DNA of 63,977 nucleotides, counting the filler, from Octopus bimaculoides (lineage: Eukaryota): NCBI RefSeq assembly GCF_001194135.2. It is 5 parts of 5 records of this genome, joined end to end, with 100 filler letters (N's around TTAATTAATTAA, not from the genome) between each part and the next. Parts side by side here need not be neighbours in the genome. Positions count along the whole stretch, not along the records: positions 14,937 to 40,649 come from NC_068989.1; 4 more parts are not named here. One strand, 5' to 3'. Numbering within the stretch: position 1 is the first letter of the stretch; each line of letters starts with the position of its first letter. Positions 18,886-37,519 of this stretch are shown one piece after another. The position numbers were made by a program, and so were the translations under genes. Below the pieces are notes generated by a model, which worked only from the letters and a program-made list of their open reading frames with translations, did not search any database and was not told where the DNA came from.

Positions 18886-19570
18886 TGCAAAGTAAGGAAT
18901 TGAGAAATATCATTGCGCTGAATTGGCTTTCTATCCCATCGAATGATGCGAGGTAGACTGGATAAGATCGACTATACACCACATTTACCTCTAAATTGTT
19001 AAACCACACAATCAGACAGAGATACGTTCGTTGAGCTGTCATTCTCATTTATAAAATCATAACTTAAACTCGTTTTCCTTTACCACATGCGCAGAATCGG
19101 CTGTGCAGATTAAGACATTCGCTTTGAATCCATAAAGATCATGGTCCAGTGCCGGGCAAGCGTCTCCCATTGTGATTTCAGGTCAAAGATTGCTTTGTGA
19201 TTGAAATTGGTAAGAGGAAACTGTGTGAAAGCACAAGATGTATACTGTATATATGCATGTGTGTATGTGTGTGTGAGTGTGTGTGTGTGTGCGTGCGTGC
19301 GTATGTGAATGCTCCTCCACGATTTCACAACTTGTGTTGATTTGTTTACATACAAATTGGCGACTCGTCAAAAAATAACAATATAACTAGTTACAGACAG
19401 AGAAAACCGTTTAAGGGTGTACGCCAGTGTGACAGAATTGCAATGATTGATGCAAGTAAATGAATTTAAAAACGCTAATGAAATGTCTTTAAAAAAAAGA
19501 TTACAGTCACCGAATTGTAATACACATTTGCTTAAGCAAATTCATTACTAATTACTGAGGGTAAAATATC

Positions 19571-19589
19571 TTCATTTCTTCTATTGCAG
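19571..19589 (+). promoter_or_regulatory. Candidate splice acceptor of a 5'-UTR intron (GPCR copy 1); paralogous site ends at 24291
   Basis: TTCATTTCTTCTATTGCAG|G, conserved in copy 2 as TTTATTTCTTCTATTGCAG|G at the edge of the duplicated unit. Confidence 0.5.
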
Positions 19590-19832
19590 GTACAACTACA
19601 AAAGCTAGTGCATATATACATATACAAAGTCAACATACCGTTGTTCTATGTTCCGAATTTTGGTTACATTCAAATACTTAAAACTGATTTATTATGTCTT
19701 CAATATATTGAAAGCATTTTCAATTTTGACCTATTCATATTACTACATTGCAGTAAAATTCATCAACAAATAGATATCAAATATATCTCTTGAATTTCTT
19801 CAATCTTGCTGCTTCAACATATTCAGTTTCAA

Positions 19833-21764
19833 ATGGAAATTATCTTAAAACATTACTTTTCTATTTTATTTCTTATCCTTATGAATCACGCCATTCTAAC
19901 TTCAAGTTCTACCTTAAAATGTTTCAATACTACGGATTGTGAATTTTGCTCATTTGAAAAACACTGTCATGTATACAAAAGATGCTGTTGTAATGAAGAT
20001 CAACAGAAAACTGTGGAGTCCAAATATTTCGATCCATCAATATATTATAATTGTAGCCTTGTTCAGACAAAAAGATATTATATCTTTGACCGCTGTCCAT
20101 CAAATTACAGTGATATAAGTCATGTGACCAGATGTGAATATCCGAAAAACAATGATAGTCTAGACAATATTCTTGTGTTCGGTGAAACAACTAAAAGACT
20201 CTACAGGAACCGATATTGTGCTTTGTGTCACACGGAGAAATATATATTATGGAATATTGTTTATGACTGCGTTAAAACAGTAAATATAAATCGTGCCAAT
20301 TTAATGAATATGATTGAAAATGGTAAATGTAACAAACGCAAAGCTCCTCCGGATGATTTAAAACCTTATCTGGTTCCTTGCATACCCAGTGTTAATAAAT
20401 GCTCGCCTCATATATTAAATAAAACATTTAAATATCAATGTCCAACTTTCGAAAAGCCACAATGTACATCGTCTAATGATTATACTGATCGAGACATCTT
20501 ATGTTGCAGTGTATCAACCAGTACAGCACCGAGTCAAAAGAGATTTCCATTAACTATAATTTTTAATTATAATATCAAATATTTAATTATTAAAGCTGAA
20601 AAAGACGGTACTGAAACTAATGCGAAATTGCCATTTTGTCCAAAATACACCAATTACGATAAAAACACAATGCGTTGTCGCACGAATTTTTATCACCCTA
20701 TCTTAAATTGTACAGCGACGAGATTAAAGGACTCCGAATATCATATCACTAGTGATGGCCTTCTCTATTTAAATACTACCCAACGTTGGCTCAATCAATC
20801 AGAATTCAGTGTTGATGAAGATGGTTTAAGTATCTGTGTAAAGAATGATAACAATGAAATATCAAAATATTCCGAAATTGAGAGCTATATCACATTAGTG
20901 GGACTAGCAATCTCTGTTCCTGCTCTAGCAGTTACTATTCTAGTTTATCTCTGTATACCTGATCTCCGTACCTTACCAGGTAAATTACTCATTAGTCTTT
21001 CATCAGCACTGTTTGTAGCTGATCTTCTCTTTCTTATCTCAACAAAAGTCACTACATCTACAGTGCTGTGTAAGTCTTTAGCTGTTGTAATGCATTATGC
21101 GTTTTTAGCGACTTTCTTCTGGACGAATGTCATGTCATTTGATGCCTGGCACACTTTCTCAGGGATTACACAACTTCGGAGTTCAGAAAAGGATACCAAA
21201 AGACTTGTATTATATTCCTTATATGCTTGGATCTGTCCACTTGTAATAGTATCAGTGTCACTGATATTTGAGTACACACCTGGAAATCATGGACTTTCTC
21301 CAGAATATGGAATTGGTATTTGCTGGATTACAAACGTGAACAGTTTGCTTTGGTTCTTCGCAATCCCTGTAATCATTATTTTATGTCTGAATATTATAGC
21401 GTATAGCATCACTATTAGAGAGTTGTATTTGGTCAGCAAACTTTCTTCGAAATATTTATCAAAACGAAACAAAAAGGTGTTCCTTATTTACATAAAATTA
21501 AGCTTCATCATGGGTTTAACGTGGATGCTCGGATTCCTTTATACGTTTACGAAGATTGACGAATTTTCTCTACTATTTTGCATCTTAAACTCTTTCGTCG
21601 GTTTACTCATTTCTTTGTCATTTCTCTTAACAAGGATCGTCTGCCGCAGTTTTCTACATATGTTTCTTAAAATACGAAAATTTGTCAATTCCTCAAATGC
21701 TGATGTTTCGACAATTAATGAAACAATGTCGACCTATACCCAACATGATACGTCACTAAAATAA
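19833..21764 (+). CDS. Class B (Methuselah-like / non-GAIN adhesion-like, 7tm_2) GPCR with uninterrupted CDS, copy 1, 643 aa
   Basis: The first in-frame ATG is at 19833 (the track starts at TTG 19806). Signal-peptide-like N-terminus, Cys-rich ectodomain (CS.EKHCHVYKRCCC; LYRNRYCALCH; EYHITSDGLLYL...EFSV...SIC), seven hydrophobic segments with LRTLPGK, C..LAVVMHYAFLATFFW.NVMSFD, YAWICP, GICWI, KLSFIMGLTW and LNSFVG. Confidence 0.93.
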   Translation: MEIILKHYFSILFLILMNHAILTSSSTLKCFNTTDCEFCSFEKHCHVYKRCCCNEDQQKTVESKYFDPSIYYNCSLVQTKRYYIFDRCPSNYSDISHVTRCEYPKNNDSLDNILVFGETTKRLYRNRYCALCHTEKYILWNIVYDCVKTVNINRANLMNMIENGKCNKRKAPPDDLKPYLVPCIPSVNKCSPHILNKTFKYQCPTFEKPQCTSSNDYTDRDILCCSVSTSTAPSQKRFPLTIIFNYNIKYLIIKAEKDGTETNAKLPFCPKYTNYDKNTMRCRTNFYHPILNCTATRLKDSEYHITSDGLLYLNTTQRWLNQSEFSVDEDGLSICVKNDNNEISKYSEIESYITLVGLAISVPALAVTILVYLCIPDLRTLPGKLLISLSSALFVADLLFLISTKVTTSTVLCKSLAVVMHYAFLATFFWTNVMSFDAWHTFSGITQLRSSEKDTKRLVLYSLYAWICPLVIVSVSLIFEYTPGNHGLSPEYGIGICWITNVNSLLWFFAIPVIIILCLNIIAYSITIRELYLVSKLSSKYLSKRNKKVFLIYIKLSFIMGLTWMLGFLYTFTKIDEFSLLFCILNSFVGLLISLSFLLTRIVCRSFLHMFLKIRKFVNSSNADVSTINETMSTYTQHDTSLK

Positions 21765-22981
21765 TAGAAATTTTTCCAGAAATATTCTAGACAACAGATA
21801 TTCTACCACAGTACACAACCTTTAGTAACGCTGCGTTCTATAAACTACACTGTAAGGCCTGTAACGTCACAACACTTGCTGCATTTTGTATCAGACTACT
21901 TTACATTTATGATAATGATATAAACGTTAAGAATTATAATAAAATGCAGACTGTGAGGGCGTCACTGATATCCTTCAACGGGCTTTCATATTAAGAACTG
22001 AAACACAGTTCCATCAATCTCAGCTTCTTATCTACTCCAGGGGACATTTTGTGGTTTTATTTATTGTCAACAAGCTTTTAACCGACTTCAGTATTTTGAG
22101 TTTCTTTTAAAGGCTAATAAATGTTTCAATAATTGGATAACACTGAATTCCTATAACATTTCAAATGCTTTTCGAATTCCGAATATATGCGTCTTTGATC
22201 ACTCTCCATAGATCTCGATTGGAAAAGAATTCACTTATTTGCCTAAATTTGGTCTGTCTTCATGAAACCATTCTCTTCACATCACATACTTATAGTAGAA
22301 TCCAATGAGATTGGAGGTGGTCTGATTCGCCAAGATTTTTGTTATGTAGAAAATATTGACAGAGCGAGCACAGTAAACTTGCCGTACCTAATGAAATATC
22401 CAACATTTTTCCAAGAGTCTTTCTCGAGGTAAATTTATGAAGAAGGAAATAAAAGAAAGCAAGAGATGTTTCTCTATGTCTGAGAGGGTCTCTATGTCTT
22501 TGTTCCGGTATCAGTTGTTTCAATTGCTCTTGTGTTATATATTCAACTACGATGTTTTCCAACTACATATTTACAAAACACATTTCAACATTCACATTAA
22601 CTATTTGTTCTCTCTAAAATATTTCGTGTATACGCGGTAAGCAATACATTTTCATTTCTATCATAAACACCGTAGAAAACAAATTTGGCTCACATGGAAA
22701 TTTTATGCTTCCAAATTTTCTAGTGTTGCAGATTATAGCCTTCCAAATATGACCCTCAAGATCGTGTTATTTGTAATATATAGAGAAACAGCATGTATAT
22801 GACACGACTGCTCACATCTCATCTTATATTCCATAACTGATTATATTTATTGAAATGATATATGATGTATTATTCATATTAAATTACTTCTTTCAATACA
22901 CGACTTGATACAATAAAAGTCCAGTAATATTTTGTGTACTGGTGACATTGCAAAATGCGTCACATTACCAATCAGATTATA

Positions 22982-23881
22982 CTGGGTAATCCCATAAATA
23001 ATGCGAATTATTCGTAGGTGAACAGGATGAACTACCTGCATCAACTTGCTATAAAACCAAGTAGTAATTTTACTTTGTCCTTATTCTCAGTGCATGTTTT
23101 GAAGAGTGCAGTTCGATTTTAACAGTTATTTCTTCGAAGCTATAATGGAAGTGACAAAGGAGCATATTCGGCATATTTTGCTTTATGAGTTCAATAAAGG
23201 CAACAACGCAACGGTAAGTGCGAGGAATATTAATGCAGTATTTGGGGATCAGACAATAAGAATAAACCTTGTCAACAGTGGTTCCAGAAATTCCGAGCCG
23301 GAAACTACAGACTAGAAGACGAGCCTTGTCCTAGAACATCTGTAGAGCTCGACGACGGAGTTCTGCAAACCTGGTGGAACAAAATCCCATCGTAACTGTT
23401 GAAAAACTAGCAGAGAAGCTTGGATTTGGTCATTTAACCAGTCATTCAAATCAGTGCTAGAAGAAAAATGACCATCTTTGGTTTCAAGATGGAAGGTGCT
23501 CTTCTATCAGGATAATGCTCGGCCACATACAGCGAGAACGAAATTCCACAGGCTGGAACAGTTTGAATGAGAAACGATGCCCCACCCACTATATTCACTG
23601 GACATTGCCCCCATCTGATTATCATTTATTTCACACTCTTCAAAATCAATTGGACTGAAAAATATGAATTCTGTAGACGAGGTCAGGAAAGTACATGAGT
23701 ATTTTTCGGCATACACAAGTAAATTTTGGAAGAGGGGTCTTGCAAATTGACAAGATGGTTGAAATACCATTGTAGAAAATGAAAGAGAGTATATTTTAGA
23801 TTGAAAAAGAACTTTGTTTATCTTAATTCTGAAAAATAAAAGAAATATTTTAAAAATCGTATTATTTATGGGATGACCAGA
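22982..23881 (+). mobile_element. Internally deleted mariner (900 bp) between the two GPCR copies
   Basis: TIRs CTGGGTAATCCCATAAATAATGCG and revcomp TCTGGTCATCCCATAAATAATACG, flanked by TA. Transposase N-terminus MEVTKEHIRHILLYEFNKG is joined directly to C-terminal QDNARPH and YS(P)DIAPSDYHLF pieces. Confidence 0.9.
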
Positions 23882-24504
23882 TATTACGTCAATACAAACA
23901 TATAATGTCCTGTTATAAAAAGATTTCCTAAATTACGCCATATGGGAGTGTGGAGTGGCTGCAGGTGTCTGTGTTTGTATGTGTCCCAACTCAGTTTCAC
24001 ATTTGCTGTTAGTTTGTTTTCGTCTTCGCAACTTAGAGTTTCATTAGTAAGATGCCGATAGGAAAAGTACCAAATATAGAAACATTACTGTGTTCGATTT
24101 GTTCCATTAAAACCTTCACTGCCGTGTCCCAATAAAGTTGCACTCCGATGGCTAAAACAAGTAAAAATATGACAAAATAATACGAGTTCAAAATATAAAG
24201 AAATAATATTATCAAATTGTTATAAGCAATTCCTTGCATCGTTTGATTATTGAATATTATTAGTAAAATATCTTTATTTCTTCTATTGCAGGTATAACTA
24301 CGAAAACTATATAACACAAAACAACTTACTCTTAAGCTATAGCTCATTCTTGTTTGCTTATATTCAAAAACATAAATACATTGGAGGCATTTTCAATTTT
24401 GACCTATTCATATTACGCCATTCTAGTAAAATTCATCAACGAATTGATATCAGTATATATCCTGGATTTCTTCAAGTTTGTTGCTTCAACATTTTCAGTT
24501 CCGA

Positions 24505-26463
24505 ATGGAAATCGTCTTAAAATATTACTTTTCTATTTTATTTCTTATCACTATATTTATGAATAACATCATTCTAACATCAAATTCCCTACTAAACTGC
24601 TTACGTACGACGGACTGTGAATTTTGCTCTCTTGGACAACACTGTCATATGTATGATAGATGCTGCTGTAATGAAAATCAACAGAAAACTGATGAGTCCA
24701 AATATTTCGATCCATCAATATATTATAGTTGCAGCCTTGTTCAGAACGAAGCATATTATATCTTTGATCGCTGTCCATCAAATCACAGTGATACAAGTCA
24801 TATAACCGGATGTGAATATCTTAAAAACAACGATAGCCCGGACAATACTCCTGTGTTCGGTGAAACAACTAAAAGACTTTATAGGAACCGACATTGCGGT
24901 CTGTGCCACTCGGAAAAATATATATTATGGGAGACAGTTTATGACTGCAAAAATACAGTAAATATAAACCCTGCCAATATAATGAATATGATTGAAAATG
25001 GTAAATGTGACAAACGGTACGCTCCTCCTGATAATTTAAAGCCGTATCTGGTTCCTTGCATTCCAAGTGTTCCTAAATGCTCGCCTCATATATTAAATGA
25101 AACATTAGAACATCACTGTCTAAATTTAGCAAGTAAGAACCATAGAGGAAAGGACCAATGTATATTAGCTAATAGCTATACTAATGAAGGCATTATATGT
25201 TGCAATAATACTGACAACAAAAAATTTGATTTTTCAAGTTTGCCTTCCTTAACTATCATTTTTTATTATAATGCCAAATATTTAATCATTAAAGAACTGA
25301 AAGGCGGTACTGTAATTGAAAAGAAATTGCCATTTTGTCCAAAATACACCAATTACGATAAAAACACAATGCGTTGTCGCGCGGATTTTTATCACCCTAT
25401 CTTAAATTGTACAGCGACGAGATTAAAGGACTCCGAATATCATATCACTGGTGATGGTCTTCTCTATTTAAATACTACCCAACGTTGGCTCAATCAATCA
25501 GAATTCAGTATTGATGAAGATGGTTTAAGTATCTGTGTAAAGAATGATAACAATGAAATATCAAAATATTCCGAAATTGAGAGCTATATCACATTAGTGG
25601 GACTAGCAATCTCTGTTCCTGCTCTAGCAGTTACTATTCTAGTTTATCTCTGTATACCTGATCTCCGTACCTTACCAGGTAAATTACTCATTAGTCTTTC
25701 ATCAGCACTGTTTGTCGCTGATCTTCTCTTACTTATCTCACCACAATTCACTACATCTACAGTGCTGTGTAAGTCTTTAGCTGTTGCAATGCATTATTCC
25801 TTTCTAGCGACTTTCTTTTGGATGAACGTCATGTCATTTGATGCCTGGCACACTTTCTCAAGACTTACACAACTCCGGAGTTCAGAAAAGGATACTAAAA
25901 GACTTGTATTATATTCCTTATATGCTTGGATCTGTCCACTTGTAATAGTATCAGTGTCACTGATATTTGAGTACACACCTGGAAATCATGGACTTTCTCC
26001 AGAATATGGAATTGGTATTTGCTGGATTACAAACGTGAACAGTTTGCTTTGGTTCTTGGCAATCCCTGTTATCATTATATTATGCCTCAATATTATAGCG
26101 TATAGCATCACTATTAGAGAATTATATTTGGCCTACAAACTTTCTTCAAAATATTTATCAAAGCAAAACAAAAAGGTGTTCTTTATTTACATAAAATTAT
26201 GCTTCATCATGGGTTTAACATGGATGTTCGCATTCCTTTATACGTTTACGAAGATTGACGAATTTTCTCTACTATTTTGCATTTTAAACTCTTTCGTCGG
26301 TTTATTCATTTCTTTGTCGTTTCTCTTAACAAGGATCGTCTGCCGCAGTTTTCTACGTATGTTTCTTAAAATGCGAAAATATGTCGAATCCTCAAACGCT
26401 GATGTTTCGACGATTACTGAAACAAACTCGACCAATATTCAAAATGAAACGTCACTAAAATAA
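24505..26463 (+). CDS. Class B (Methuselah-like / non-GAIN adhesion-like) GPCR with uninterrupted CDS, copy 2, 652 aa
   Basis: The first in-frame ATG is at 24505. Same architecture as copy 1 with an intact reading frame and a near-identical juxtamembrane/7TM core. Confidence 0.93.
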   Translation: MEIVLKYYFSILFLITIFMNNIILTSNSLLNCLRTTDCEFCSLGQHCHMYDRCCCNENQQKTDESKYFDPSIYYSCSLVQNEAYYIFDRCPSNHSDTSHITGCEYLKNNDSPDNTPVFGETTKRLYRNRHCGLCHSEKYILWETVYDCKNTVNINPANIMNMIENGKCDKRYAPPDNLKPYLVPCIPSVPKCSPHILNETLEHHCLNLASKNHRGKDQCILANSYTNEGIICCNNTDNKKFDFSSLPSLTIIFYYNAKYLIIKELKGGTVIEKKLPFCPKYTNYDKNTMRCRADFYHPILNCTATRLKDSEYHITGDGLLYLNTTQRWLNQSEFSIDEDGLSICVKNDNNEISKYSEIESYITLVGLAISVPALAVTILVYLCIPDLRTLPGKLLISLSSALFVADLLLLISPQFTTSTVLCKSLAVAMHYSFLATFFWMNVMSFDAWHTFSRLTQLRSSEKDTKRLVLYSLYAWICPLVIVSVSLIFEYTPGNHGLSPEYGIGICWITNVNSLLWFLAIPVIIILCLNIIAYSITIRELYLAYKLSSKYLSKQNKKVFFIYIKLCFIMGLTWMFAFLYTFTKIDEFSLLFCILNSFVGLFISLSFLLTRIVCRSFLRMFLKMRKYVESSNADVSTITETNSTNIQNETSLK

Positions 26464-27956
26464 TTGAAACTTCTCCAGAAATATTCTAGACAACAGACAT
26501 TCTACCACAGTACACAACCTATTGTAATGCTACATTCTATAAACTACACTGTAAAAGTCTCTAACACCACTTACTGCATTCTATCTCAGACTAATTTATG
26601 TTTATGATAACCTTATAAGCGTTAAGTATTATAATTAGAATGCAGATTTTGATGACGTTCTTGATATCCTTCAACGAGCTTTCGTATTAGAAACTGAAAC
26701 AGAGTTTCCTCTCACTACACACTTTCACCAATCTCAGATTGTCACCCTCTCCAGCAAGCTTTTTCAGAATGTATCTATTGCCAACGATTTTTAAATCGAC
26801 TTCAGTACTTTTGTTTTCTCATGGGGATTAATAACATTTCAACAATTAGATAATGTTGAATATCTATAAGTTTTCAAATATTTTTCATATTCTGGATAAA
26901 TACATCTTCGATCACTTTCATCATAGATCTCGTTCAGAAAAATTCACCTACGTGGCTGACATGTACATTCTCAAGCATTCGCTTGTTGGCTTGAAACCAT
27001 TCTTTTCACATCACATGTAATATTTATATCAGAATCCAATGAGACTAAATGTCGTCTGCATCGTTAAGAATTTTTGTTATCTCGGAAATATGACAGAACA
27101 AGTACAGTGAACTTGCCGTACATAATGGAATGTCCAATATTCTTGTATGAGTCCTCAAGGTAAATTTGAACTGAAATGAAATAAAAGACAGCAGAACTTT
27201 ACATTCTCCGGAGTCAACTGTCTCGTTGTTATCAAACTACAATGTTTGCAGGACAAATTTCGAATATGCTGTGAACATTACATGTAATAAATATAGCAAA
27301 ATCTAAGGAGGGCGATGATAATGTGTATTGACAAGATTTTTCTTGTTTGGAATATGAGAATGAGAATGGTAAAATAGCCGTTGCGTGATGAATATCCAAC
27401 TTTTCTGTAAACATTCTGCTTAAAATAAATTTGACAGGAGGAAAGTAAAAGAAAAACAATAGGGTTTTACATCATCTATTTTAAGAAACTGGTTTCATTT
27501 GGGGACGAACTAACTTAAAATATCTTCTATCTTGTATTGACCCATGATTTTTCAAACTATAACTAAACTAAATCTATTTCAAACGTTCCCATTGTGCATC
27601 TGTTACGTTTAGATGCGTGATAAATTGCGTGATGGGAATTTGTACAATTCATGACTGCTTCTATATCGTGAGATATCATATTCCATTCGTTAATTACTAC
27701 TACTCTAAATAATTATATGTATTATGCCTCAATATCATGCGTGTCTCTTTTGCATGACTACATACTTTTCTTTCCTTCCAACATCAAAGAACTTTGCACC
27801 TTACTTGACATTTTATATTACACTACTATTTCTAATTCTTCAGTGCCTACATTGAATGATTAAATTCCATAGCAGACTGTATGATATAAATATTATATTT
27901 TATGGAACTATACTTCATGCAATTAGTTACACTACATTATTATTATTAACGCACAT

Positions 27957-28460
27957 CCTTAGGCGACGAGCTGGAAGAATCGGTAGCACTCCGGGTAAAA
28001 TGCTTAGCGTCATTTCGTCTGTCTATACATTCTGAGTTCAGATTCCGCCGAAGTCGACTTTGTCTTTTCATCCTTTCGGGGTTGATAAAATAAGTACCAG
28101 CTGAGTACTAGGGTCGATATAATCGATTATCCCTCTCCCACAAATATCAGGCCTTGTGCCTATAGTAGAAGGGATTATTAATGTGTATCCTAAGGCGACG
28201 AGCTGGAAAAATCATTAGCACTCCGAGCAAAATGCTAAGCGGCATTTCGTCCGTTTTTACGTTCTGAGTTCATATTCCGCCGAGGTCGACTTTGCCTTTC
28301 ATCTTTTCGGGGTCGATAAAACAAGTACCAGTTGAGCACTGAGGTTAATGTAATCGACTTACCCTTCCCTCGAATTTAATGGCCTTGCACCAAAATTTGA
28401 AATCACTATTAATGCGCATCCTAAGACGACAAGCTTTGTTCCTAAATTTGAAGTCAATAT
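27957..28460 (+). mobile_element. Tandem array of tRNA-derived SINE family 'X' (Deu/Nin-like central domain): two full copies and one deleted copy
   Basis: GGCGACGAGCTGG.AGAATC.TTAGCAC...TTCTGAGTTCA.ATTCCGCCGAGGTCGACTTTGCCTTTCATCCTTTCGGGGTCGATAAAATAAGTACCAG. Other copies at ~28600-28810(-), 31790-31990(+), 32090-32310(-), 32320-32470(-), 32560-32655(-), 44990-45210(+), 53090-53310(+) and 55360-55640(+). Confidence 0.8.
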
Positions 28461-28875
28461 TACATGTATTGTTAAATATGTCTGCTTTTATTATTAGAGT
28501 TGTTGTTTTATATGTTCGGTTCCATTAACTGCAAGTTTTATTACATTACATGATGAGGTTGCTTACCTTTCATGTCATGCTCATTTGCAGTTTATGCAGG
28601 GTGTCTCAATAAACTTTTCCACCAAAGGCACAAGGCCTGAAATTTGGGGTGAAGTAGAGCTAATTGATTACATTGAACCCAGCACTTGACTGGTACTTAT
28701 TTATAGACTCCGTAAGCATGAAAAACAAAGCCGATCTCAACGGTATTTGAACTCGGAAAAAAATGCTTCTAAGCATTTTGTCCGGCGTACTAACGATTCT
28801 ACCAGATCACTTTGAGGTGTCTCATAATAATGGGAAACATCTTATACACAACTGGGACTGGAACACGCAAATCTA

Positions 28876-30102
28876 CCAGGTTGAATCAAAAGGTTTTTTT
28901 TAATTTAAAGCTTTGGTTAATAGTTCAAACAGATTGTATATAGAAAGTGTTTATTCATCAAAATATATCCCATCATATTCTATTGTCATCGTTGTGCTAG
29001 AAGCTCAATTCCACGCTTACACCATTTGGCTGGTTCAGAGGCAAAAAAACTCCCCGCATACGTTTTCAAACTTACCTACATTGTTAAACCTCCGACTGTG
29101 CAGGAAATGGGTCATAGCTTGGAGAAGGTGGTAATCAGATGGTGCAAGGTCTGGACTATAGGCAAGATGAGGCAGCACAAGTTTCTCAAGTTTGTGCTTA
29201 GTCCCATTGGCAGTGTATGCCGAGATATTGTCATGCTGTAGGGATGCGCGTCTTCGATTGACTAATGCCAGTAGCAGGCTTTTGAAGCATCGTATACTCG
29301 CTGCAGTTTATGAGCATGAAAATTAATGTTCACAGCATGACCATCTGAGACAAGCTCAAAATGCAACAACCCCTTCAAATTCCACCAAACACATAACATG
29401 ACCTTCTATTCAAACCACCCTTATTTGACAACAGGTTCTGAAGCCTGGCTTCAACGCTGCTACGTATTTCTGTTATTAGGATTGCGAAAATAGATCCATT
29501 TTTCATCCCCAGATACAACTCGTCGCCAAAAACGGACATTTAAAGGATTCTCCAACAGTTGTTTGCAAATGTTCTCACGTTGTTGAGACTGGTCATTGGT
29601 AAGTTCATGAGGAACTTCTCCACAACTTCTCGAGCTTATGGAGGTGTCAGTTGATTGTGCTTTACGAATGATCAGGTTCTACCAACAATGTACGAGCTTG
29701 TGCTTGTCTGTTGTTTAACCATTTCAAGCAAGGCCACATTTTCCATATCAGAAGATTCCTTGACCTTAGTTTTCCTTTGAGGCTGGTGTCACCTTCCTTG
29801 AAATTTTGATCCCACACCTTCGTTGACAGTTCATTAATTTCTGTTGAATTTGTCCTTGCACTCAGTCCTTTTCTCCACAGATAGCGTAAATGGCTCTAAT
29901 TGCAATTTTTTCACCACTTATTATCAAAGGTGTGAAATAAAGAATAAGCAATTAATGTTTGTATACTATATATTGAAAACAAGAATAAACTATTCAGCAG
30001 CGATTGGATAACAAGTTGTATCAAATTAATGATGTAACATGAAGATATAAGTCGCCAAAAATCAACACAGAAAATCAGAAAAAAACTTTTGACTCAATCT
30101 GG
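28876..30102 (-). mobile_element. Full-length (1227 bp) decayed mariner
   Basis: TIRs CCAGGTTGAATCAAAAGGTTTTT and revcomp CCAGATTGAGTCAAAAGTTTTTT, flanked by TA. The minus strand carries LAYSPDLAPSDYHL and other transposase remnants. Confidence 0.85.
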
Positions 30103-33100
30103 TAATATAAATAAATTATAAATATTACAAATAAAGTATGTTCCATCAGTATGAGACGCCCTGAATTACGTAATTATTTATATTCGATAACATTTCCTTA
30201 CAGGTTTTCTTACATTTCACCATTGTTAATATTACACATCTTGTTATATTTAATAATGAATTATTCTGTTTTAGAGAGAGAGTTTTGCACGTCTTATTAA
30301 ATATCAGTGATATGCATTATGCAATTTGTTATATTTCATGAATTACCGTTATGAATTACTTGCCATGTTGCATTATACAGCAGCCTATAATAACTTTATA
30401 GCCACGGGAATAAAATGCAAATTTATTTAACTTGTGAAAACCTCATGAAAAATTAACAAGAACTAATGAAATTTTGTTTCAATAATTCTAGGCTGTTGAT
30501 TAACAGCCCAGTCAAGATGGTATTTTCTTCATCTCCTACTCTTGTATTTGCACACATTTGAAAAATCACTTTCTGAAATGAACTTCCATTATGCAGCTGA
30601 GGAGTACATTTTCATTGCACATCTTATGTGGTGTTCTCACTACATAAATAAATGAAGTTTGTACGAAACGTACGTACTGCTATAACCTAATACATTTTTG
30701 TTGCTTTTCTTCAAATTTTATTCACCAAATCTCTTGATCTCGTTTTTGGTTTTTACCCTACCAAATTCTGGTGCCACATACATTTTAAGTATCACATTTA
30801 ATCTTTTGATTAAATCTATATTATATATATATATATATNNNNNNNNNNNNNNNNNNNNNNNNNNNNNNNNNNNNNNNNNNNNNNNNNNNNNNNNNNNNNN
30901 NNNNNNNNNNNNNNNNNNNNNNNNNNNNNNNNNNNNNNNNNNNNNNNNNNNNNNNNNNNNNNNNNNNNNNNNNNNNNNNNNNNNNNNNNNNNNNNNNNNN
31001 NNNNNNNNNNNNNNNNNNNNNNNNNNNNNNNNNNNNNNNNNNNNNNNNNNNNNNNNNNNNNNNNNNNNNNNNNNNNNNNNNNNNNNNNNNNNNNNNNNNN
31101 NNNNNNNNNNNNNNNNNNNNNNNNNNNNNNNNNNNNNNNNNNNNNNNNNNNNNNNNNNNNNNNNATAAATTTAATTAGGTGTTAAATAACCACCTAAGGG
31201 ATATTAAATATCCAAAGTATTTACTGGGTTTTTTACCTATATAAATAACAATATTATGAACTATCGCTCTTAACAAATTGGTAAATAAATAAAATAAACA
31301 TACAGCTTATCAATGTATAAATATGAATTAGAAATAGAGAACAAAATAATGAAGTGAATAACTAAATAATTTTATCATGAAATGATAAATTCAATTCAAT
31401 TTTATTATTTTATACAAACAAATGACACATCTCATAAATTACAACTTTTTCGAGAATAATAAAATACCGTTTAAATATAATGAGGTGAGTTTCATCAGAT
31501 AGATATATCTTCTTTTTTTTTTTTTTTTGTTGCTTTTCAATTGCGATGAGCAAACCAGTGTAATTTCAGGAACAAGGCAAATGACTTGTTAAAGTTGAGC
31601 AAATAATATTAGAAAACTTTTGTTTGGTACCTGAAATTCATGACAAATACTATCATTCGAAATAAAATTAACTTTTCGTAAAATATTTAATAAGAAATGA
31701 CACCATTTATATGTAAGGCAAGTATGTATAACAAATATTTTACTCAAATTTCCAATAAATCATTTTAATGTTATAAGATGGAAAAATCGTTAAATTAGTG
31801 CTATAAACGTTTTACAGTATTTCTTCTGACTCTTTATGTCCTGAGTTCAAATGTACACAAGGCCAGCCTTTCACATCATTCGTCCGAGGTCGAGAAAATA
31901 AAATCCTAGTCAAGTACTGGGGTCGATGTAATCCACCAACTACCTCCCCTCAAAATTACTGGACTCGCGCCTAAATCAGAAGCACTATTAATTGTCCAAA
32001 TATTATAGTCACTTGCTTACACTCCTCCTCCTCCCTCTTCTTCACTCGACTTCCAGCAACTATGATGACAGACGTACACCACCAATCCTGCAATAATCCT
32101 TTCCATTCTAGATGCAAGGCCTGAAATCTTGGGGAAGAAGGTAAGTCGATTACATCGATATTAGTGCTCAGCTGGTACGTATTTTATCGAATGCGAAAGA
32201 ATGAAAGACAAAGTCGACCTTGACGGAATTTGAACTCGGGACGTAATGCTGGAAGAAATGTCGCTAAGCATTCTGTCCGGAGTGATAACGGTTCTGTCAG
32301 TTCGCTGCCTTCCAGTCACGGTAATAAAAGTTTTAACTTTTGGTACAAGACCAGAAAGTTCGGGGAGGGGTTAAGTCGATTACGTCGATCCCGGTGTTCA
32401 AATGGTACTTATTTTACCGACCCTGAAATGATGAAAAGCAAAGTCGACCTCGGCGGAATTTGAACTCAGAATCACGGTAAAAATACCGTCTGTGTGACAT
32501 TGTTCCATCATCATATGTTTCCAACTAATATTCATTTCAAATTTTTTCAACAAGGGCAGCTTGGGGAATATGGGAATGAGTCGATTACATCGAACCGAGT
32601 GTTCAACTGGTACTTATTTTATCGACCTCGAATAAAGTCGACCTCGGCGGAATAATACCTTGGTTGCTTAAAATTATTGCTTTAAGACAATCATCGTTTA
32701 CAATCGCAGCAATAATGCGTTCGAAATACGGTGGTTATCGTCCTTAAGTCAGATAACTAACTTCTGGTATGCAGGCTTAAACCATAAAAAATTATGAGAA
32801 AATTGACTTCTTTGTTACAATATTTCTGTTGAATTACGTTGCCCTTGTGTAAATTAATTCTGAAAAGAGTGAAGATTTTAAAAAAATAACTGTGATTATC
32901 AAGTAGGTTTGGGGAGCATAAATTAACAAACTTTAACAGAGTTTTCATGTAGATTCCTTTAAAACGGAAAGTTTATAGTAGAAGCAGGGTCGACTTCAGG
33001 CGGGTTGGGTTAGTTTCAAAATGGTTGAACTATCGTCTCGTCCATTACCAAACATAGTAAGTCAAAATTTACATAATATTCTTGCCTCTAGGAATATTCA

Positions 33101-33248
33101 ACATAAACCATTCAATAAATAAATCAGACGCTCGTCTCTCCTACCATATTTACGGATTGATGGTTCAAGTACTAACAGTGTACTTCGTTAGATCTCTGTG
33201 TTGATTCGATTTCAGCTAAGAATTGGGTTGGGTCAGTATTGCGATCAC

Positions 33249-33405
33249 AAGGGGATGGTAGCGAACCCTGCTGTACTCTTCCACCACAACTTTCTCTCAC
33301 TCTTTCTTCCTGTTTCTGTTGTACCTGTATTTCAATACAGAAAAGGGGAGAAAATTCACTGATTTTTGTGAATGTATATAGGAATCCCAAAATCCATGTT
33401 AAACC
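33249..33405. other. Chimera: SINE internal fragment (33249-33334) fused to a 71-bp copy of GPCR copy 3 (33335-33405 = 35748-35818)
   Basis: 70/71 identity to the TM6-ECL3-TM7 coding region of the 35600-37519 gene. The SINE part matches the family at 39390-39773. Confidence 0.9.
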
Positions 33406-34707
33406 ATCCTTTTGGATTCGTTAAGAGAGCTTGTAATGAGACAGATCTTACATAGCCATTAGGACACCGAATGTTTTCATACATTGAATTGACATCTATT
33501 AATTAGATTCATTTTGCTGGAGACTTGTCCTTTTTATGTTGTATAAATTTCCGTCTGCAAAACAGACCCTGAATGCGTCAACCACGTCGCAGATCGTCTC
33601 TCGTCAGTGGCATGTCGTTCATGTGAAGTGCATGTGGAGTTTGAATGGAGTGAGCTTTAGGAGTGAAAAATAGCCCAATTAAATTGAGAAAGTTTTTTTG
33701 ATTTCACTGTCAATCATATAAGACTTCCATATGCTGTACTCGATGTCATGTAAGGCGCATTTTTTTAAAACATATCTCAAAAGATCACCTTGAATCCTAT
33801 ATGCAAAGTTGTCCCATTCCCTCATAAGCTTTATTGAATTATAAACTATTCTTTTCCCTCAATATTCGTTGCTGACATTGGGGTGCATCTAATATACCCA
33901 TGTATCATTCATACCACTAGCTATGGTAATCACATTATATATTTCCGTTTCCCGCTTCCCAATACAGGAATTTATAGGAGACTTGCTAACTGGAATGTTC
34001 CTCAGTGGATATATTTTTTAACCCACTTGATATAAAAACAGGCACTTTGGGTGGACTTAGTAAATCGCGGCAAATAGTGAAAACGATTAATCGAAGCACT
34101 CGATAACTTCACCAATAGTCATAATCGAGTATGGTAGAACAAGAAAAGACTCTGGAAAATTCGTCTACGACTGTTAACAAATATGTGTTTCTGTTTTTGT
34201 TTTTACTTCAGGATACTTTAATTCGACAGAAAGGCGTCCAAATGCATATGTAACTTTGATTAACTTGCTTTCTTGTTTATTGTTTCAATTTAGCGCAGAC
34301 TAAAGGTGAAAAGCCATCTTTATCATCTGTAGAGTAAGGCAACTTCTTTATCCGCACACTGTCTGACAGTACCAGGAAGGCATAGGTGAATATGGATATC
34401 TCTCAGATATCCATATTCGCTAGACATCCCTAGATATAATTTCAAAATGCACAATCCAAATGCCATTTTATTCAAGACTACTTCCCATGATCGATCATGA
34501 ATACTATTGAACGTTGGTCAGTAATAAGTACAAAATGCCTTTTAGATAAGAATTAAGGCCTTTTCATACTACCTCAGTAACTGATGTAGACTACGTTTCA
34601 GCACATGGATGCAATTCATAACCTTACAGAATTCTTTACATTAATATTACAAACAGGTCAATCACTGCGATTCAGAGCAGCAGAAACAAATTTCTCANNN
34701 NNNNNNN

Positions 34708-34724
34708 CGACGCTCTTCCGATCT
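34708..34724 (+). other. Illumina adapter remnant (artifact)
   Basis: CGACGCTCTTCCGATCT directly after a 10-N gap is the 3' end of the TruSeq read-1 primer/adapter. Confidence 0.95.
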
Positions 34725-35599
34725 ATCGTCGATCGAATTAAGATTTGTATTTTCGAGTTCATCCTTTAAACGATTCAATAGCGAAGATGTCGATAGGCAA
34801 AAAAAGATTTGTCAGAAAAATGAATGAGCTTTCTCAAAAAATCAAGAATCCATTTTGCATGGTGTGCAAACATTCGGAGTGAATGCTTTAAAAAAGGACA
34901 TCGAAGATGACGTAAATAGCTGAATAATAGATGCAGTCAATAATAATCCAATTCAGTTTGACCGTTACCAAATTCATCTCCTAGAATTTTAATTGCTGTC
35001 GCTGATCTTTGATATCTCAAATGTAATTTAATCGTGTTTCCAGCGTGTTATTTCTGCGATTATTGACGAAGTTAATCTTAAAGGTTTACTTACAATTTAC
35101 TAACCCAGTCTGTTGCAGTGTCTCAATTGACAATTTCAGCAGTATTCATCCATATTCATTCAATTTCTTAAATATGTCCGCTTTTTGATGAGTCTTTGCT
35201 TTGTCTTCTCATAATTATGAGTGATGGGAGTATGTTACCAAAAGTCAATTATCCGAGGGAGGTCGTTCACTGAATCTGCTGTGAAATCTCAATTCAGAAT
35301 GGAATGGAATGGAAAACGAATGCAGCTTAAAGCATAAAATCTGAAAGCTAAAACTTTTTTTAAATCTCCTTGTCAATTAGAATGCTGTCACAGATTCAGC
35401 AAACAATAACACTTCTTATGTCAGGTAACTGGCTTCTTGTGCACAATCTTCAGTCTTTTTTAGTTCTGGGAAAACCAAACAATCGTCTCATCGAACGCCA
35501 AACATAACAAGATTCAATTCGCATAACAGACCTTTTTTCAAGCTAAGAGCGCCGAGTAAATAATAAATATAAACCAAATGTATGTTTAACAAATGCTGT

Positions 35600-37519
35600 T
35601 TATTGGATATTTCTTTCAGATGCTGATGGTGATGTACGGTATAAAGTAGACATTTTCGAGAAATTCCCAAACTGCAGGCATTTTCTAGCTATTACTCTTG
35701 TGGAAAGAAAAGAAAAACAAACAAACAATCCCAAAAATGAATTACCGATACAGAAAAGGAGAGAAAATTCACTGATTTTTGTGAATGTATATAGGAATCC
35801 CAAAATCCATGTTAAACCCATAACAAGACTGAGCTTGAAGAAAATTTTGAAGTTAATATTATGGTAACTTAATAAATATTTTGAAGAACGCTTCATTTCT
35901 AAACGGAGGCCTCTTGAAATAAAAATAAAAGCTAAAACATTAAGTGTTAACAGTATAATAACTGGAATTCCAAACACCCATAAAAGACATTTTCCATTTG
36001 TAATCCAACATATACCCTTGCCATATGCTGGGGAAACTGCTTTGTTTTCTGGTATATACTCAAGTAGGAGTGACATCGTTACAATTATAAGTGGACTGAG
36101 CCATGCATATATAGAATACAGTAAAAGTTTTTTATTACCCTGATTAGAAATATGAAATTGCATCAATCCTGAGAAAGTGCGGCAGGCATCAAACGATACG
36201 ACATTCATCCAGAAGAACGATGCCAAGAAAGAATAATGCATCAAAACAGCTGTCAAAATACATTGAATAGTATACGGAGGCACATATCTAGAAATAAGAA
36301 ACAAAACCTCTGCCAAAAACAGCGATGACAGAAGATTGATTACGAATTTGCCTGGTAAAGTACGTAGTTCAGGTATACAGAGATAAGTTACAATTGTTAT
36401 TAGTAGAGCAGGAACAGAAATAGTAAGACCTATAAATGTAATATAACTCTCAGATGTAGCATATTTTGATATTGCACCGAAGTCCTTATCTATGCAGATA
36501 CTTATGCCTTGAGTATCCTGACTGAATTCTGATCTGTTCAGTAGTCGTTGAGTTTTATTCAAATAAAGCAGACCGTCATCAGTGAGGTAATATTCATCAT
36601 CATTTAGTCTCACTGCAATACAATTGATGAGTGAATGGAAGAAAACTGAACGACACTGGTTTTGATAAACATCAAATAATAAATCACTGTTACAGAGAAT
36701 TGCTTCATGCCTTCCTGCGCTTCTATTCGTGTCGCCACTCTCTTGAATAGCATTTATGTACTGCAATATATTACTGCTGTGGTCGAATATTATAGTCAAT
36801 GGATAGGTTCTTCCAAACTCTTTGCGATCTGCACCAAAATATGTAGAGTTTAAGTCATTACATAAAGCACAGTTTTGGTACTTATTTGAAGAAGCCGGTG
36901 ACTTGGAATTTGTTTCACATAACTCCGATCTATTTTCATGTTGCTCTTTTATAGAACAATTCGAAATATCGTATAAGCATTCATATAGATTATTAATAAA
37001 TGTAATATCTGGGACATCAAATGAATAAAAGTTACATGTGCCATTTGAAAGGTGCCTTGAAAGTTGCTGATATGTAATATTACTCATATTGCATTCATAA
37101 ATCGATTTTCCCAAAATGTATTCTTGATCGTTGCACAAAGCACAGAATACATTCTTGTACAATTTTTTGTCTACTTTCCCGAAAGCTGGTACTTTCAAGA
37201 TATAATCTCCATCAACAGAATTCTCACATTTTCTCACATATTCTTTAATAGGGTAACTAGGAAGGCATTTGTCAAGGGCAATGTAATATCCAATTTTCAG
37301 TTTCGTACAACTTTGTGCAGAAATATTTTGATTATGAGAAACATTACGATTAGGCAGGTCTACACAGCAATTCTTAAATAAGTGACATTCAGGTTGACAA
37401 GAACATTTGTGATATAGCTCCCATTCCGAGCAAGAAACTGATGTTGCATCATAATACTTACTTTGCAAACATAAATTAGCATTTATAAAAAAGTAGAAGA
37501 TAAATGAAACCCACTTCAT
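35600..37519 (-). CDS. Class B (Methuselah-like / SMB-motif) GPCR with uninterrupted CDS, copy 3, 639 aa, diverged paralog
   Basis: ATG in AAACAATG context and a signal-peptide-like MKWVSFIFYFFINA. Motifs: CSCQPECHLFKNCCVD (SMB-like), LYKNVFCALCN, EYYLTDDGLLYL...EFS...ISIC, LRTLPGK, HYSFLASFFWMNVVSFD, YAWLSP, GICWI, KLSLVMGLTW and GNSFLG. Confidence 0.93.
   Translation of the reverse strand: MKWVSFIFYFFINANLCLQSKYYDATSVSCSEWELYHKCSCQPECHLFKNCCVDLPNRNVSHNQNISAQSCTKLKIGYYIALDKCLPSYPIKEYVRKCENSVDGDYILKVPAFGKVDKKLYKNVFCALCNDQEYILGKSIYECNMSNITYQQLSRHLSNGTCNFYSFDVPDITFINNLYECLYDISNCSIKEQHENRSELCETNSKSPASSNKYQNCALCNDLNSTYFGADRKEFGRTYPLTIIFDHSSNILQYINAIQESGDTNRSAGRHEAILCNSDLLFDVYQNQCRSVFFHSLINCIAVRLNDDEYYLTDDGLLYLNKTQRLLNRSEFSQDTQGISICIDKDFGAISKYATSESYITFIGLTISVPALLITIVTYLCIPELRTLPGKFVINLLSSLFLAEVLFLISRYVPPYTIQCILTAVLMHYSFLASFFWMNVVSFDACRTFSGLMQFHISNQGNKKLLLYSIYAWLSPLIIVTMSLLLEYIPENKAVSPAYGKGICWITNGKCLLWVFGIPVIILLTLNVLAFIFISRGLRLEMKRSSKYLLSYHNINFKIFFKLSLVMGLTWILGFLYTFTKISEFSLLFCIGNSFLGLFVCFSFLSTRVIARKCLQFGNFSKMSTLYRTSPSASERNIQ

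What the first reader, a model, noticed from the sequence alone, without database searches (positions are those of the whole stretch)
19833..37519. Cluster of three intact class-B GPCRs with intron-free CDSs and variable Cys-rich ectodomains: candidate lineage-specific receptor repertoire
Secretin and adhesion GPCRs are normally intron-rich. Here three 639-652 aa receptors have uninterrupted CDSs, are tandemly arrayed (two recent, one older, convergent) and keep open frames in a region where every transposon ORF has decayed. Divergence is concentrated in the ectodomain. Intron-free, tandem, ectodomain-diversifying organisation is the pattern of chemosensory and immune recognition families, so this may be part of an uncharacterised cephalopod expansion of Methuselah-like receptors. 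Function is inference only.
Basis: partly seen in the sequence, partly recalled or inferred. Interest (0 to 1): 0.8.

Follow-up and report, generated by a model that had tools for sequence, protein, structure and literature searches.

The report
Known octopus Methuselah-like receptor gene cluster
These are three intact, single-exon receptor genes from a tandem cluster on an Octopus bimaculoides chromosome, and this octopus-specific 'Methuselah-like' GPCR expansion, including these same three genes, was already described in 2019, so the finding is real but not new.

Summary
The piece carries three uninterrupted class-B GPCR reading frames: A 19833-21764 (+), 643 aa; B 24505-26463 (+), 652 aa; C 35600-37519 (-), 639 aa. 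All have a strong Pfam 7tm_2 match. A and B are 81% identical, A and C 45%. No assembly gap touches a CDS.

The window is Octopus bimaculoides chromosome CM046609.1. By exact spacing the genes are Ocbimv22034333m, 34334m and 34335m, the last three of 15 'class B group 4' genes on Scaffold69694 in Ritschard et al. 2019 (PMC6408891). That paper already reports the octopus-specific, tandem Methuselah-like expansion, its expression and its purifying selection. A and B are sucker/skin-restricted. C is expressed in viscera, axial nerve cord and embryo.

What I add:
- The ectodomain is a degenerate Somatomedin-B-like knot plus DUF8401. It has no Methuselah_N, GAIN/GPS or HRM, and no fold match in the PDB.
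- The intron-free CDS is shared with the Lottia homolog, so it is not a cephalopod novelty.
- The 5'/3' divergence contrast between A and B is largely a gene-conversion effect. Ortholog comparisons still show a faster-evolving ectodomain (omega 0.7-1.0, against 0.23 in the 3' part).

A chemosensory or immune role remains untested. Interest is low.

The parts
19833..21764 (+). Gene A: single-exon CDS, 643 aa (= Ocbimv22034333m, whose model starts at Met17). Signal peptide about aa 1-24, ectodomain to about aa 350, 7TM aa 351-593 (nt 20883-21611), short C-tail.
   Evidence: ORF. 7tm_2 E 2.4e-28. Exact spacing match to Table S2. AF2 full-length model pLDDT 78.5 with seven transmembrane helices plus a C-terminal helix.
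24505..26463 (+). Gene B: single-exon CDS, 652 aa (= Ocbimv22034334m, whose model starts at Met19). 7TM aa 360-602 (nt 25582-26310).
35600..37519 (-). Gene C: single-exon CDS, 639 aa (= Ocbimv22034335m, whose model is 147 bp shorter at the 5' end). Ectodomain nt 36449-37519, 7TM aa 358-600 (nt 35720-36448). Convergent with A and B.
   Evidence: Found on GCA_001194135.2 CM046609.1. The O. sinensis ortholog P0001 is 90% identical and the same length.
19561..22461 (+). Tandem duplication unit, copy A. It includes about 270 bp upstream of the ATG and about 700 bp downstream of the stop codon.
   Evidence: Self-BLASTN 19561-22461 vs 24263-27193, 82.8% over 2983 columns.
24263..27193 (+). Tandem duplication unit, copy B.
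20669..21668 (+). Gene-conversion tract between A and B (counterpart in B about 25368-26367). It covers the juxtamembrane beta-domain and most of the 7TM, and is 88-100% identical per 100 nt (eight of ten windows at 95% or more) inside a background of about 60-90%.
   Evidence: Sliding identity. A-B dS is 0.02 in the juxtamembrane domain and 0.12 in the 7TM, against 0.40 in the 5' ectodomain. Ortholog dS there is 0.13-0.23.
20394..20582 (+). Hypervariable, predicted-disordered ectodomain loop of A (aa about 188-250). It separates the N-terminal Cys-rich half from the juxtamembrane beta-domain.
   Evidence: 58-65% nt identity with indels. pLDDT below 50 at aa 189-250. omega about 1.
33334..33405 (-). 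72-bp relic of a C-like receptor (TM7 peptide GLTWILGFLYTFTKISEFSPLFCI), lying in a segment that is absent from O. sinensis.
   Evidence: tblastn 96% to C aa 568-591. The segment 32428-34697 has no counterpart in L002.
30839..31164 (.). Assembly gap (326 N), intergenic between B and C.
   Evidence: It corresponds to about 2.5 kb of receptor-free DNA in O. sinensis.
34698..34707 (.). Assembly gap (10 N), 893 bp downstream of C's stop codon. It coincides with the end of collinearity with O. sinensis.

Best explanation
These are three functional members of the already described octopus-specific tandem cluster of Methuselah-like (Mth/Mthl clade) class-B GPCRs, 'group 4' of Ritschard et al. 2019, on O. 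bimaculoides chromosome CM046609.1.

Each single exon encodes:
- a signal peptide;
- a Cys-rich ectodomain, made of a degenerate Somatomedin-B-like knot and DUF8401 (an N-terminal alpha/beta half, a disordered hypervariable loop, then a juxtamembrane beta-rich domain);
- a 7TM bundle of the adhesion/Mth type;
- a short tail.

Shown:
- The frames are intact in two octopus species.
- The 7TM is under purifying selection.
- The duplication is at DNA level and carries flanking DNA with it.
- Copy number turns over: two A/B-type copies here, three in O. sinensis, plus relics.
- A conversion tract of about 1 kb keeps the signalling half of A and B nearly identical, while the ectodomain halves keep the older divergence.

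From the literature: A and B are transcribed almost only in sucker and skin; C is transcribed in viscera, axial nerve cord and embryo.

Inferred:
- An extracellular ligand, still unknown, binds the DUF8401 ectodomain and activates the 7TM to couple to a G protein.
- This happens without the autoproteolytic tethered-agonist step of adhesion GPCRs, because there is no GAIN/GPS.
- Paralogs differ mainly in ligand specificity and tissue, not in downstream signalling.
For: - Identity and position. The window protein is found on GCA_001194135.2 CM046609.1. Spacing matches Table S2 to the base: A end to B start is 2795 bp and B stop to C stop is 9137 bp.
- Family. 7tm_2 E about 1e-25 to 1e-28. CDD 7tmB3_Methuselah-like 1.6e-82 for gene A's model, from Table S3. 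DUF8401 is recorded for the window's C and its 652-aa neighbour, which is gene B. The best PDB sequence and fold matches are adhesion-GPCR 7TMs, with TM-score normalised to the target of 0.75-0.82.
- Function retained. C against its O. sinensis ortholog has the same length, 90% identity and 7TM omega 0.34. A and B orthologs have 7TM omega 0.21-0.26. Invariant TM3 Cys and ECL2 Cys-Trp across 70 homologs.
- Expression. Table S2.
- DNA-level duplication with flanks.
- Gene conversion.
- Birth and death. Three copies plus a relic in O. sinensis, and a relic here.
- Cluster monophyly relative to Lottia, Owenia, Lingula, Penaeus and amphioxus in an NJ tree.
Against: - No ligand, G-protein coupling or cell type is known for any member.
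- The expression values are proportions across 12 bulk tissues, so absolute levels may be low.
- The ectodomain's N-terminal knot is modelled with low confidence (pLDDT 45-72).
- My tree is a simple NJ tree without Drosophila sequences. The assignment to the Mthl clade rests on the published phylogeny and the CDD match.
- The conversion inference rests on pairwise dS with modest counts. For the 3' part, Fisher p is 0.079 and 0.011.
Confidence: 0.82

Rival explanations
1. One reading: this is a chemosensory or immune-type recognition repertoire. The ectodomains would be under diversifying selection to recognise many external ligands (prey or surface chemicals, microbes), with A and B acting in sucker and skin sensory or epithelial cells.
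For: - A and B are expressed only in sucker and skin.
- Ortholog omega in the ectodomain half is 0.72 (A) and 0.96 (B), and 1.0-1.5 in the hypervariable loop, against 0.23-0.24 in the 3' part.
- Copy-number turnover and relics.
- Conversion spares the ectodomain, as it does in some recognition-gene families.
Against: - Family-wide omega is 0.306, with no positively selected sites in the published codon tests.
- The repertoire is small: 15 genes on the scaffold, and 45 across two species.
- The Cys scaffold is conserved.
- The fastest region is a predicted disordered loop, where omega about 1 is what relaxed constraint gives.
- C and other cluster members are expressed in viscera, nerve cord, embryo or ova.
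- The intron-free structure is ancestral, not a repertoire signature.
Confidence: 0.2
2. The genes are retrocopies or decaying duplicates. They would be intron-free because they were retroposed, with open frames kept only by youth, and without function.
For: Single-exon CDS. TE-rich, gap-rich surroundings. Narrow and possibly low expression.
Against: - The duplication unit carries about 270 bp of upstream and about 700 bp of downstream non-coding DNA, so it is a tandem DNA duplication, not retroposition.
- The single-copy Lottia homolog is intron-free too.
- All frames are intact in O. sinensis as well, at dS 0.08-0.2 with 7TM omega 0.2-0.34.
- A/B divergence in the 5' half (dS 0.40) is about 3-4 times the species split, yet both frames remain open.
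Confidence: 0.03
3. They are adhesion GPCRs proper, activated by a tethered agonist after autoproteolysis, and sense cell-cell or cell-matrix contact or mechanical force.
For: The closest solved 7TMs by sequence and fold are adhesion GPCRs: ADGRD1, G2, G6, L3, L4. Some O. sinensis paralogs are auto-named 'latrophilin receptor-like'.
Against: - No GPS or GAIN Pfam hit in the three proteins or in 63 relatives.
- No GAIN structure among the Foldseek hits to a pTM 0.70 ectodomain model; best E-value 0.2.
- The stalk before TM1 (NDNNEISKYSEIES) has no H-L/T cleavage motif and no hydrophobic Stachel-like peptide (sequence).
Confidence: 0.05

Closest known systems
Octopus-specific class-B 'group 4' Methuselah-like GPCR expansion (Ritschard, Fitak, Simakov, Johnsen 2019, PMC6408891)
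   Same: These are the same genes. Ocbimv22034333m, 34334m and 34335m on Scaffold69694 match the window's A, B and C to the base in spacing. [quoted passage not shown]
   Different: Nothing in kind. The paper does not describe the ectodomain architecture, the ancestral intron-free state or the A/B gene-conversion mosaic. Its gene models start at internal Met codons, which removes the signal peptide.
Drosophila Methuselah / Methuselah-like receptors (Mth/Mthl family as defined by the 7TM; de Mendoza et al. 2016, PMC4768249)
   Same: - The 7TM is of the same clade (CDD cd15039).
- There is no GPS.
- The family is prone to lineage-specific tandem expansions and extinctions.
- Non-arthropod members lack the Mth ectodomain, and some carry Somatomedin_B.
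   Different: No Methuselah_N ectodomain; the ectodomain is a Somatomedin-B-like knot plus DUF8401 instead. No known ligand, and no lifespan or stress phenotype.
Adhesion GPCRs (ADGRD1, ADGRG2, ADGRL3 and others)
   Same: They give the best solved-structure matches for the 7TM, at 22-27% identity and TM-score normalised to the target of 0.75-0.82. Both have large extracellular regions.
   Different: No GAIN/GPS and no tethered-agonist motif. The CDS is a single exon, not many exons.
Bilaterian Somatomedin_B-DUF8401-7tm_2 receptors (Lottia LOTGIDRAFT_155591, Branchiostoma 'ADGRL2'-named proteins, Owenia and Penaeus proteins)
   Same: Same domain order. Shared motifs: CxCDxxCxxYxDCC, and YxNxYCALCN twice. 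Few or no introns: Lottia 0, Owenia 1, and amphioxus with none in its ectodomain.
   Different: The octopus cluster proteins are shorter (ectodomain about 350 aa against 440-750), their SMB knot has degenerated below Pfam's threshold, and they are multiplied in tandem.

Membership tests
Class B (7tm_2) GPCR | Full-length match to the secretin/adhesion-type seven-helix domain | tested here: met
   PF00002 E 2.8e-25 to 2.4e-28, profile positions 5-250 of 250, in A, B and C. The AF2 model has a seven-helix bundle at pLDDT mostly 85-98. Foldseek probability 1.00 to class-B 7TMs.
Class B (7tm_2) GPCR | Conserved TM3 Cys and ECL2 Cys-Trp (disulfide pair) | tested here: met
   C413 and C497 are invariant and W498 nearly invariant across 70 homologs.
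Ritschard 2019 'group 4' octopus cluster | Being one of the listed loci on Scaffold69694 | tested here: met
   Gene lengths and intergenic distances (2795 bp, 9137 bp) are identical to Table S2 rows Ocbimv22034333m-35m. The source assembly was confirmed.
Mth/Mthl family (7TM-defined) | 7TM groups with Methuselah-like receptors rather than with secretin or adhesion receptors | tested here: inconclusive
   Published InterProScan for gene A's model gives CDD cd15039 7tmB3_Methuselah-like at 1.6e-82, and the published tree places group 4 next to Mthl15. In my own pairwise test, A scores 103 bits to a Methuselah_N-bearing receptor, P0080. The best human adhesion GPCR scores 68 bits in a separate phmmer search. 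The two scores come from different programs, so the comparison is only rough. I did not build a tree with Drosophila sequences.
Methuselah proper (ectodomain-defined) | Methuselah_N ectodomain (PF06652; 10-Cys fold of PDB 1FJR) | tested here: not met
   No PF06652 hit in A, B, C or 63 relatives. No Mth ectodomain among the Foldseek PDB hits; best E-value 0.2. hhalign of the ectodomain profile against the N-terminus of P0080 gives probability 0.3%.
Adhesion GPCR | GAIN domain with GPS autoproteolysis site and tethered agonist | tested here: not met
   No GPS or GAIN Pfam hits. No GAIN fold match. No HL/T motif before TM1.
Secretin-type (B1) hormone receptor | Hormone-receptor (HRM) ectodomain | tested here: not met
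   No HRM hit. B1 receptors match only through the 7TM and rank behind adhesion GPCRs.
SMB-DUF8401-7tm_2 receptors | DUF8401 (PF28443) ectodomain | tested here: met
   Precomputed PF28443 hits for the window's C (weak) and for its 652-aa neighbour, gene B, and for nearly all homologs. The model is absent from the local Pfam copy, so I could not re-score it.
SMB-DUF8401-7tm_2 receptors | N-terminal Somatomedin_B domain | tested here: inconclusive
   C scores 16.1 bits, below the 23.1 cut-off. A and B have no hit. 24 of 63 relatives hit at E <= 0.01. The Cys pattern aligns, but the region is modelled at low pLDDT.
Chemosensory-type receptor repertoire | Positive selection on ligand-binding residues | tested here: inconclusive
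   Pairwise omega is 0.7-1.0 in the ectodomain half and 1.0-1.5 in the loop. The published site tests are negative. No recombination-aware site model could be run.
Chemosensory-type receptor repertoire | Expression in sensory receptor cells | not testable with these tools
   Only bulk-tissue proportions are available (sucker and skin for A and B).

The most novel reading that the evidence does not exclude
The sucker- and skin-restricted pair A/B, and their O. sinensis counterparts, could be contact chemoreceptors or microbe sensors. They would bind ligands through a structurally novel ectodomain (DUF8401, with no PDB fold match). Gene conversion would keep the signalling half uniform while the ectodomain and its hypervariable loop diverge. 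That would be a GPCR-based complement to the nicotinic-receptor-like chemotactile receptors of octopus suckers.
Probability: 0.12. Interest if true: 0.6.

Novelty: already known. Interest (0 to 1): 0.18.

Why it matters
The cluster is one of two octopus-specific class-B GPCR expansions that have been linked to arm, sucker and skin biology. If its ligands were found, it would bear on how octopus peripheral tissues sense their surroundings. As a scan finding, however, it re-discovers a published result, and these very genes are in that paper's tables.

The small additions made here would help anyone planning selection tests or de-orphanisation:
- the ectodomain is a Somatomedin-B-like knot plus DUF8401, with no solved structural relative;
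- the intron-free state is ancestral in molluscs;
- A/B gene conversion confounds any comparison of ectodomain against 7TM;
- the current gene models cut off the signal peptide.

Tried and rejected
- **Pfam on the three proteins and 63 relatives** for Methuselah_N, GPS/GAIN and HRM: none found.
- **Foldseek of the ectodomain model against the PDB**: no hit at E <= 0.001, and TM-score normalised to the query of 0.10 or less. Mth-ectodomain, GAIN and HRM folds are rejected.
- **hhalign of the ectodomain profile against the N-terminus of a Methuselah_N-bearing receptor**: probability 0.3%. The BLASTP alignment of A to that receptor does run about 100 residues upstream of TM1. I treat that as an unproven lead, not as homology.
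- **Retrocopy idea**: rejected because the duplication carries its flanks and because Lottia is intron-free.
- **A hidden fourth gene in the gaps**: the matching O. sinensis DNA holds no receptor sequence.
- **Pfam on short flanking ORFs** to name the transposon remains: nothing above cut-off.
- **Bacterial promoter/terminator scan**: irrelevant for a eukaryotic locus, and ignored.
- **Literature searches** for DUF8401, Mthl15 function, or later work on octopus sucker class-B GPCRs: nothing beyond Ritschard 2019 and de Mendoza 2016.
- **Region boundaries**: my first dN/dS table used boundaries about 28 columns off. One search corrects it, and the conclusions did not change.


Full report
**Observation.** A is 19833-21764 (+), 643 aa from the first ATG. 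B is 24505-26463 (+), 652 aa. C is 35600-37519 (-), 639 aa. The next longest ORF free of N is 132 aa, and the DNA is 33-35% GC. Each protein has a full-length Pfam 7tm_2 match in its C-terminal half, E 2.8e-25 to 2.4e-28. A and B are 81% identical, and A and C 45%. A and B lie head to tail, and C is convergent.

The N runs are at 17592-18590, 30839-31164 and 34698-34707. None lies inside a CDS, so the frame-continuity caveat does not affect the three genes.

**Source and prior description.** An exact-sequence look-up places protein C on Octopus bimaculoides assembly GCA_001194135.2, chromosome CM046609.1, at about 75.0 Mb. Ritschard et al. 2019 (PMC6408891) describe two octopus-specific class-B expansions. 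Their 'group 4' comprises 45 Methuselah-like receptors from O. bimaculoides and Callistoctopus minor. It is tandemly co-localised, has a homogeneous omega of 0.306 and no positively selected sites, and is said to derive from Mthl15.

Their Table S2 lists 15 group-4 genes on Scaffold69694. The last three are:
- Ocbimv22034333m, 202444-204327 (+);
- Ocbimv22034334m, 207122-209026 (+);
- Ocbimv22034335m, 218163-219935 (-).

These fit the window exactly. The first two models equal A from Met17 (1884 bp) and B from Met19 (1905 bp). The A-end to B-start distance is 2795 bp in both the table and the window. The distance from B's stop to C's stop is 9137 bp in both. All three published models are single-exon.

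The table gives expression as proportions across 12 tissues:

| Gene | Tissues (proportion of expression) |
|---|---|
| A | sucker 0.22, skin 0.78 |
| B | sucker 0.46, skin 0.54 |
| C | stage-15 embryo 0.09, viscera 0.64, axial nerve cord 0.27 |

Table S3 gives CDD 7tmB3_Methuselah-like at 1.6e-82 for gene A's model. I found no later functional work.

**Anatomy of the proteins.** Homologs are widespread:
- many paralogs on the same chromosome in O. bimaculoides and on the syntenic O. sinensis chromosome;
- a more distant octopus paralog on another chromosome;
- proteins from Lottia, Owenia, Lingula, Penaeus, mites, bugs, echinoderms, rotifers and amphioxus.

Their precomputed architecture is PF28443 (DUF8401) plus 7tm_2, often preceded by Somatomedin_B. 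Among 63 aligned relatives, 62 hit 7tm_2 and 24 hit Somatomedin_B at E <= 0.01. None hits Methuselah_N, GPS/GAIN or HRM. In the window proteins, Somatomedin_B is sub-threshold in C (16.1 bits against a cut-off of 23.1) and undetected in A and B. The family consensus nonetheless shows the SMB-like CxCDxxCxxYxDCC knot, followed by two YxNxYCALCN motifs. The ectodomains carry 24, 24 and 23 Cys, mostly at shared positions.

An AlphaFold2 model of A's ectodomain (pLDDT 76.5, pTM 0.70) has three parts: a structured alpha/beta half, a disordered loop (aa about 188-228, extended to 189-250 in the full-length model) and a juxtamembrane beta-rich domain. Foldseek against the PDB finds nothing at E <= 0.001. 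The fold is therefore not that of the Methuselah ectodomain, a GAIN domain or an HRM.

The full-length model (pLDDT 78.5) has a confident seven-helix bundle. Its best matches are adhesion-GPCR 7TMs (ADGRG2, L4, D1, L3; TM-score normalised to the target 0.75-0.82), ahead of secretin-type receptors. The sequence search of the PDB agrees. There is no cleavage motif and no hydrophobic tethered-agonist peptide before TM1.

**Intron-free structure.** The CDS is also uninterrupted in the three or four O. sinensis orthologs, in the distant O. sinensis paralog P0030 and in the Lottia gigantea homolog. Owenia has one intron. Branchiostoma belcheri has five, all in the 7TM part, with an 815-aa ectodomain exon. 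Intron poverty is thus a property of this receptor family, at least in molluscs. It is not a derived signature of the octopus cluster.

The A/B duplication is 19561-22461 against 24263-27193 and includes non-coding flanks. It is therefore a tandem DNA duplication, not retroposition.

**Evolution of the A/B pair.** The syntenic O. sinensis locus has three intact A/B-type genes, a 47-aa relic and the convergent C ortholog. By the variable region, A is orthologous to Osin1 and B to Osin3.

Nei-Gojobori estimates show a mosaic:

| Region (alignment columns) | A-B paralog dS | A-Osin1 ortholog dS | B-Osin3 ortholog dS | Fisher p (A-B vs each ortholog pair) |
|---|---|---|---|---|
| 5' part, 1-290 | 0.40 | 0.13 | 0.095 | 7e-5, 8e-7 |
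| 3' part, 291-628 | 0.094 | 0.16 | 0.19 | 0.079, 0.011 |

In the juxtamembrane domain, A and B differ at a single synonymous site in 88 codons.

At nucleotide level, identity jumps from 58-90% to mostly 95-100% (88-100%) over 20669-21668. It falls back to 60-80% after the stop codon. The simplest reading has two steps. The duplication is about 3-4 times older than the split between O. bimaculoides and O. sinensis. A later gene conversion then homogenised the 3' kilobase.

Ortholog pairs are not confounded in this way, and they still show a faster ectodomain. Omega is 0.72 (A) and 0.96 (B) in the 5' part, against 0.23-0.24 in the 3' part, and 1.0-1.5 in the disordered loop. C against its ortholog gives 0.53 and 0.43. 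This fits relaxed constraint, with or without some positive selection. It does not demonstrate diversifying selection.

**Gaps.** Against the gap-free O. sinensis locus, the window is collinear from 37600 down to 34724, which is 17 bp from the 10-N gap. The next 2.27 kb (34697-32428) has no counterpart in O. sinensis and contains a 72-bp relic of a C-like TM7 (33334-33405). Collinearity resumes at 32427-31165 and again at 30494-26000. The 326-N gap plus 344 bp faces about 2.5 kb of O. sinensis DNA with no receptor similarity. The stop-to-stop distance between B and C is 9.1 kb here and 9.0 kb in O. sinensis. The gap sizes are unverified, but no gene appears to be hidden.

**Mechanism.** The best-supported account is this. 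These are working class-B receptors of the Mth/Mthl clade. An unknown extracellular ligand is read by the Somatomedin-B-like/DUF8401 ectodomain. The signal passes to an adhesion-like 7TM without autoproteolysis. The paralogs are partitioned by tissue: A and B in sucker and skin, C in viscera and nerve cord. The cluster evolves by tandem duplication, loss and conversion.

Gene integrity, selective constraint, architecture and evolutionary dynamics are shown. Ligand binding, G-protein coupling and any sensory or immune role are inferred. The chemosensory or immune reading stays possible for A and B but is unsupported beyond tissue distribution. The retrocopy and true-adhesion-GPCR readings are rejected.

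**Verdict.** My additions are incremental. Novelty: already known. Interest: low.

Noticed in passing
window 33334-33405 (-): A 72-bp relic encoding 24 aa of a C-like TM7 (96% identical to C aa 568-591). It sits next to a repeat copy (33250-33333, about 90% identical to 39563-39646), inside a 2.27-kb segment that O. sinensis lacks.
   Followed up: partly
L003 7381-9318, 9947-11887, 15801-17759; relic at L003 14403-14543: The syntenic O. sinensis locus has three intact A/B-type genes, against two in O. bimaculoides, plus a 47-aa TM2-TM3 relic. Copy number is therefore turning over between species. Copies 1 and 2 are only about 600 bp apart.
   Followed up: partly
window 34698-34707 and 30839-31164: The 10-N gap coincides with the point where collinearity with O. 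sinensis stops. The 326-N gap faces about 2.5 kb in O. sinensis, so its stated length may be an underestimate, or there is an indel.
   Followed up: partly
window 19833-19880 and 24505-24558; L003 9947: The 2015-era models (Ocbimv22034333m and 34m) and the NCBI model P0012 start at an internal Met. That drops the hydrophobic N-terminus, which looks like the signal peptide (AF2 helix aa 2-21). The first ATG is the more plausible start.
   Followed up: partly
window 27942-28435, 28607-28811, 32091-32654: Several copies, direct and inverted, of an interspersed repeat of about 200-400 bp (70-83% identity) lie in the B-C intergenic region. It was not classified.
   Followed up: no
window 17403-17591 and 18591-18873 (-), flanking the 999-N gap: Two ORF fragments abut the gap: a Cys-rich one (...CNDSRCGTCRSI...LIYCIKCPNCEELYV) and one reading FDIAMGSSDSAQV. 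From memory they resemble GIY-YIG and reverse-transcriptase motifs of Penelope-like retroelements. Pfam gave no hit, so this is unconfirmed.
   Followed up: partly
proteins P0023, P0092, P0093, P0094 (O. vulgaris, O. sinensis): Some annotated octopus relatives carry DUF8401 but no 7tm_2. One example is P0094, a 432-aa 'isoform X3'. They could be truncated models, pseudogenes or secreted ectodomain-only products.
   Followed up: no
L007 3001-8066 (Branchiostoma belcheri P0047): All five introns of the amphioxus homolog fall in the 7TM-coding part, and its 815-aa ectodomain is a single exon. That is the opposite of what exon shuffling of ectodomain modules would predict.
   Followed up: no
protein A aa 247-355 vs P0080 aa 65-169: The BLASTP alignment to a Methuselah_N-bearing receptor continues about 100 residues upstream of TM1, into the juxtamembrane beta-domain. 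A profile test was negative. Remote homology between the C-terminal part of DUF8401 and part of the Mth ectodomain is possible but unproven.
   Followed up: partly
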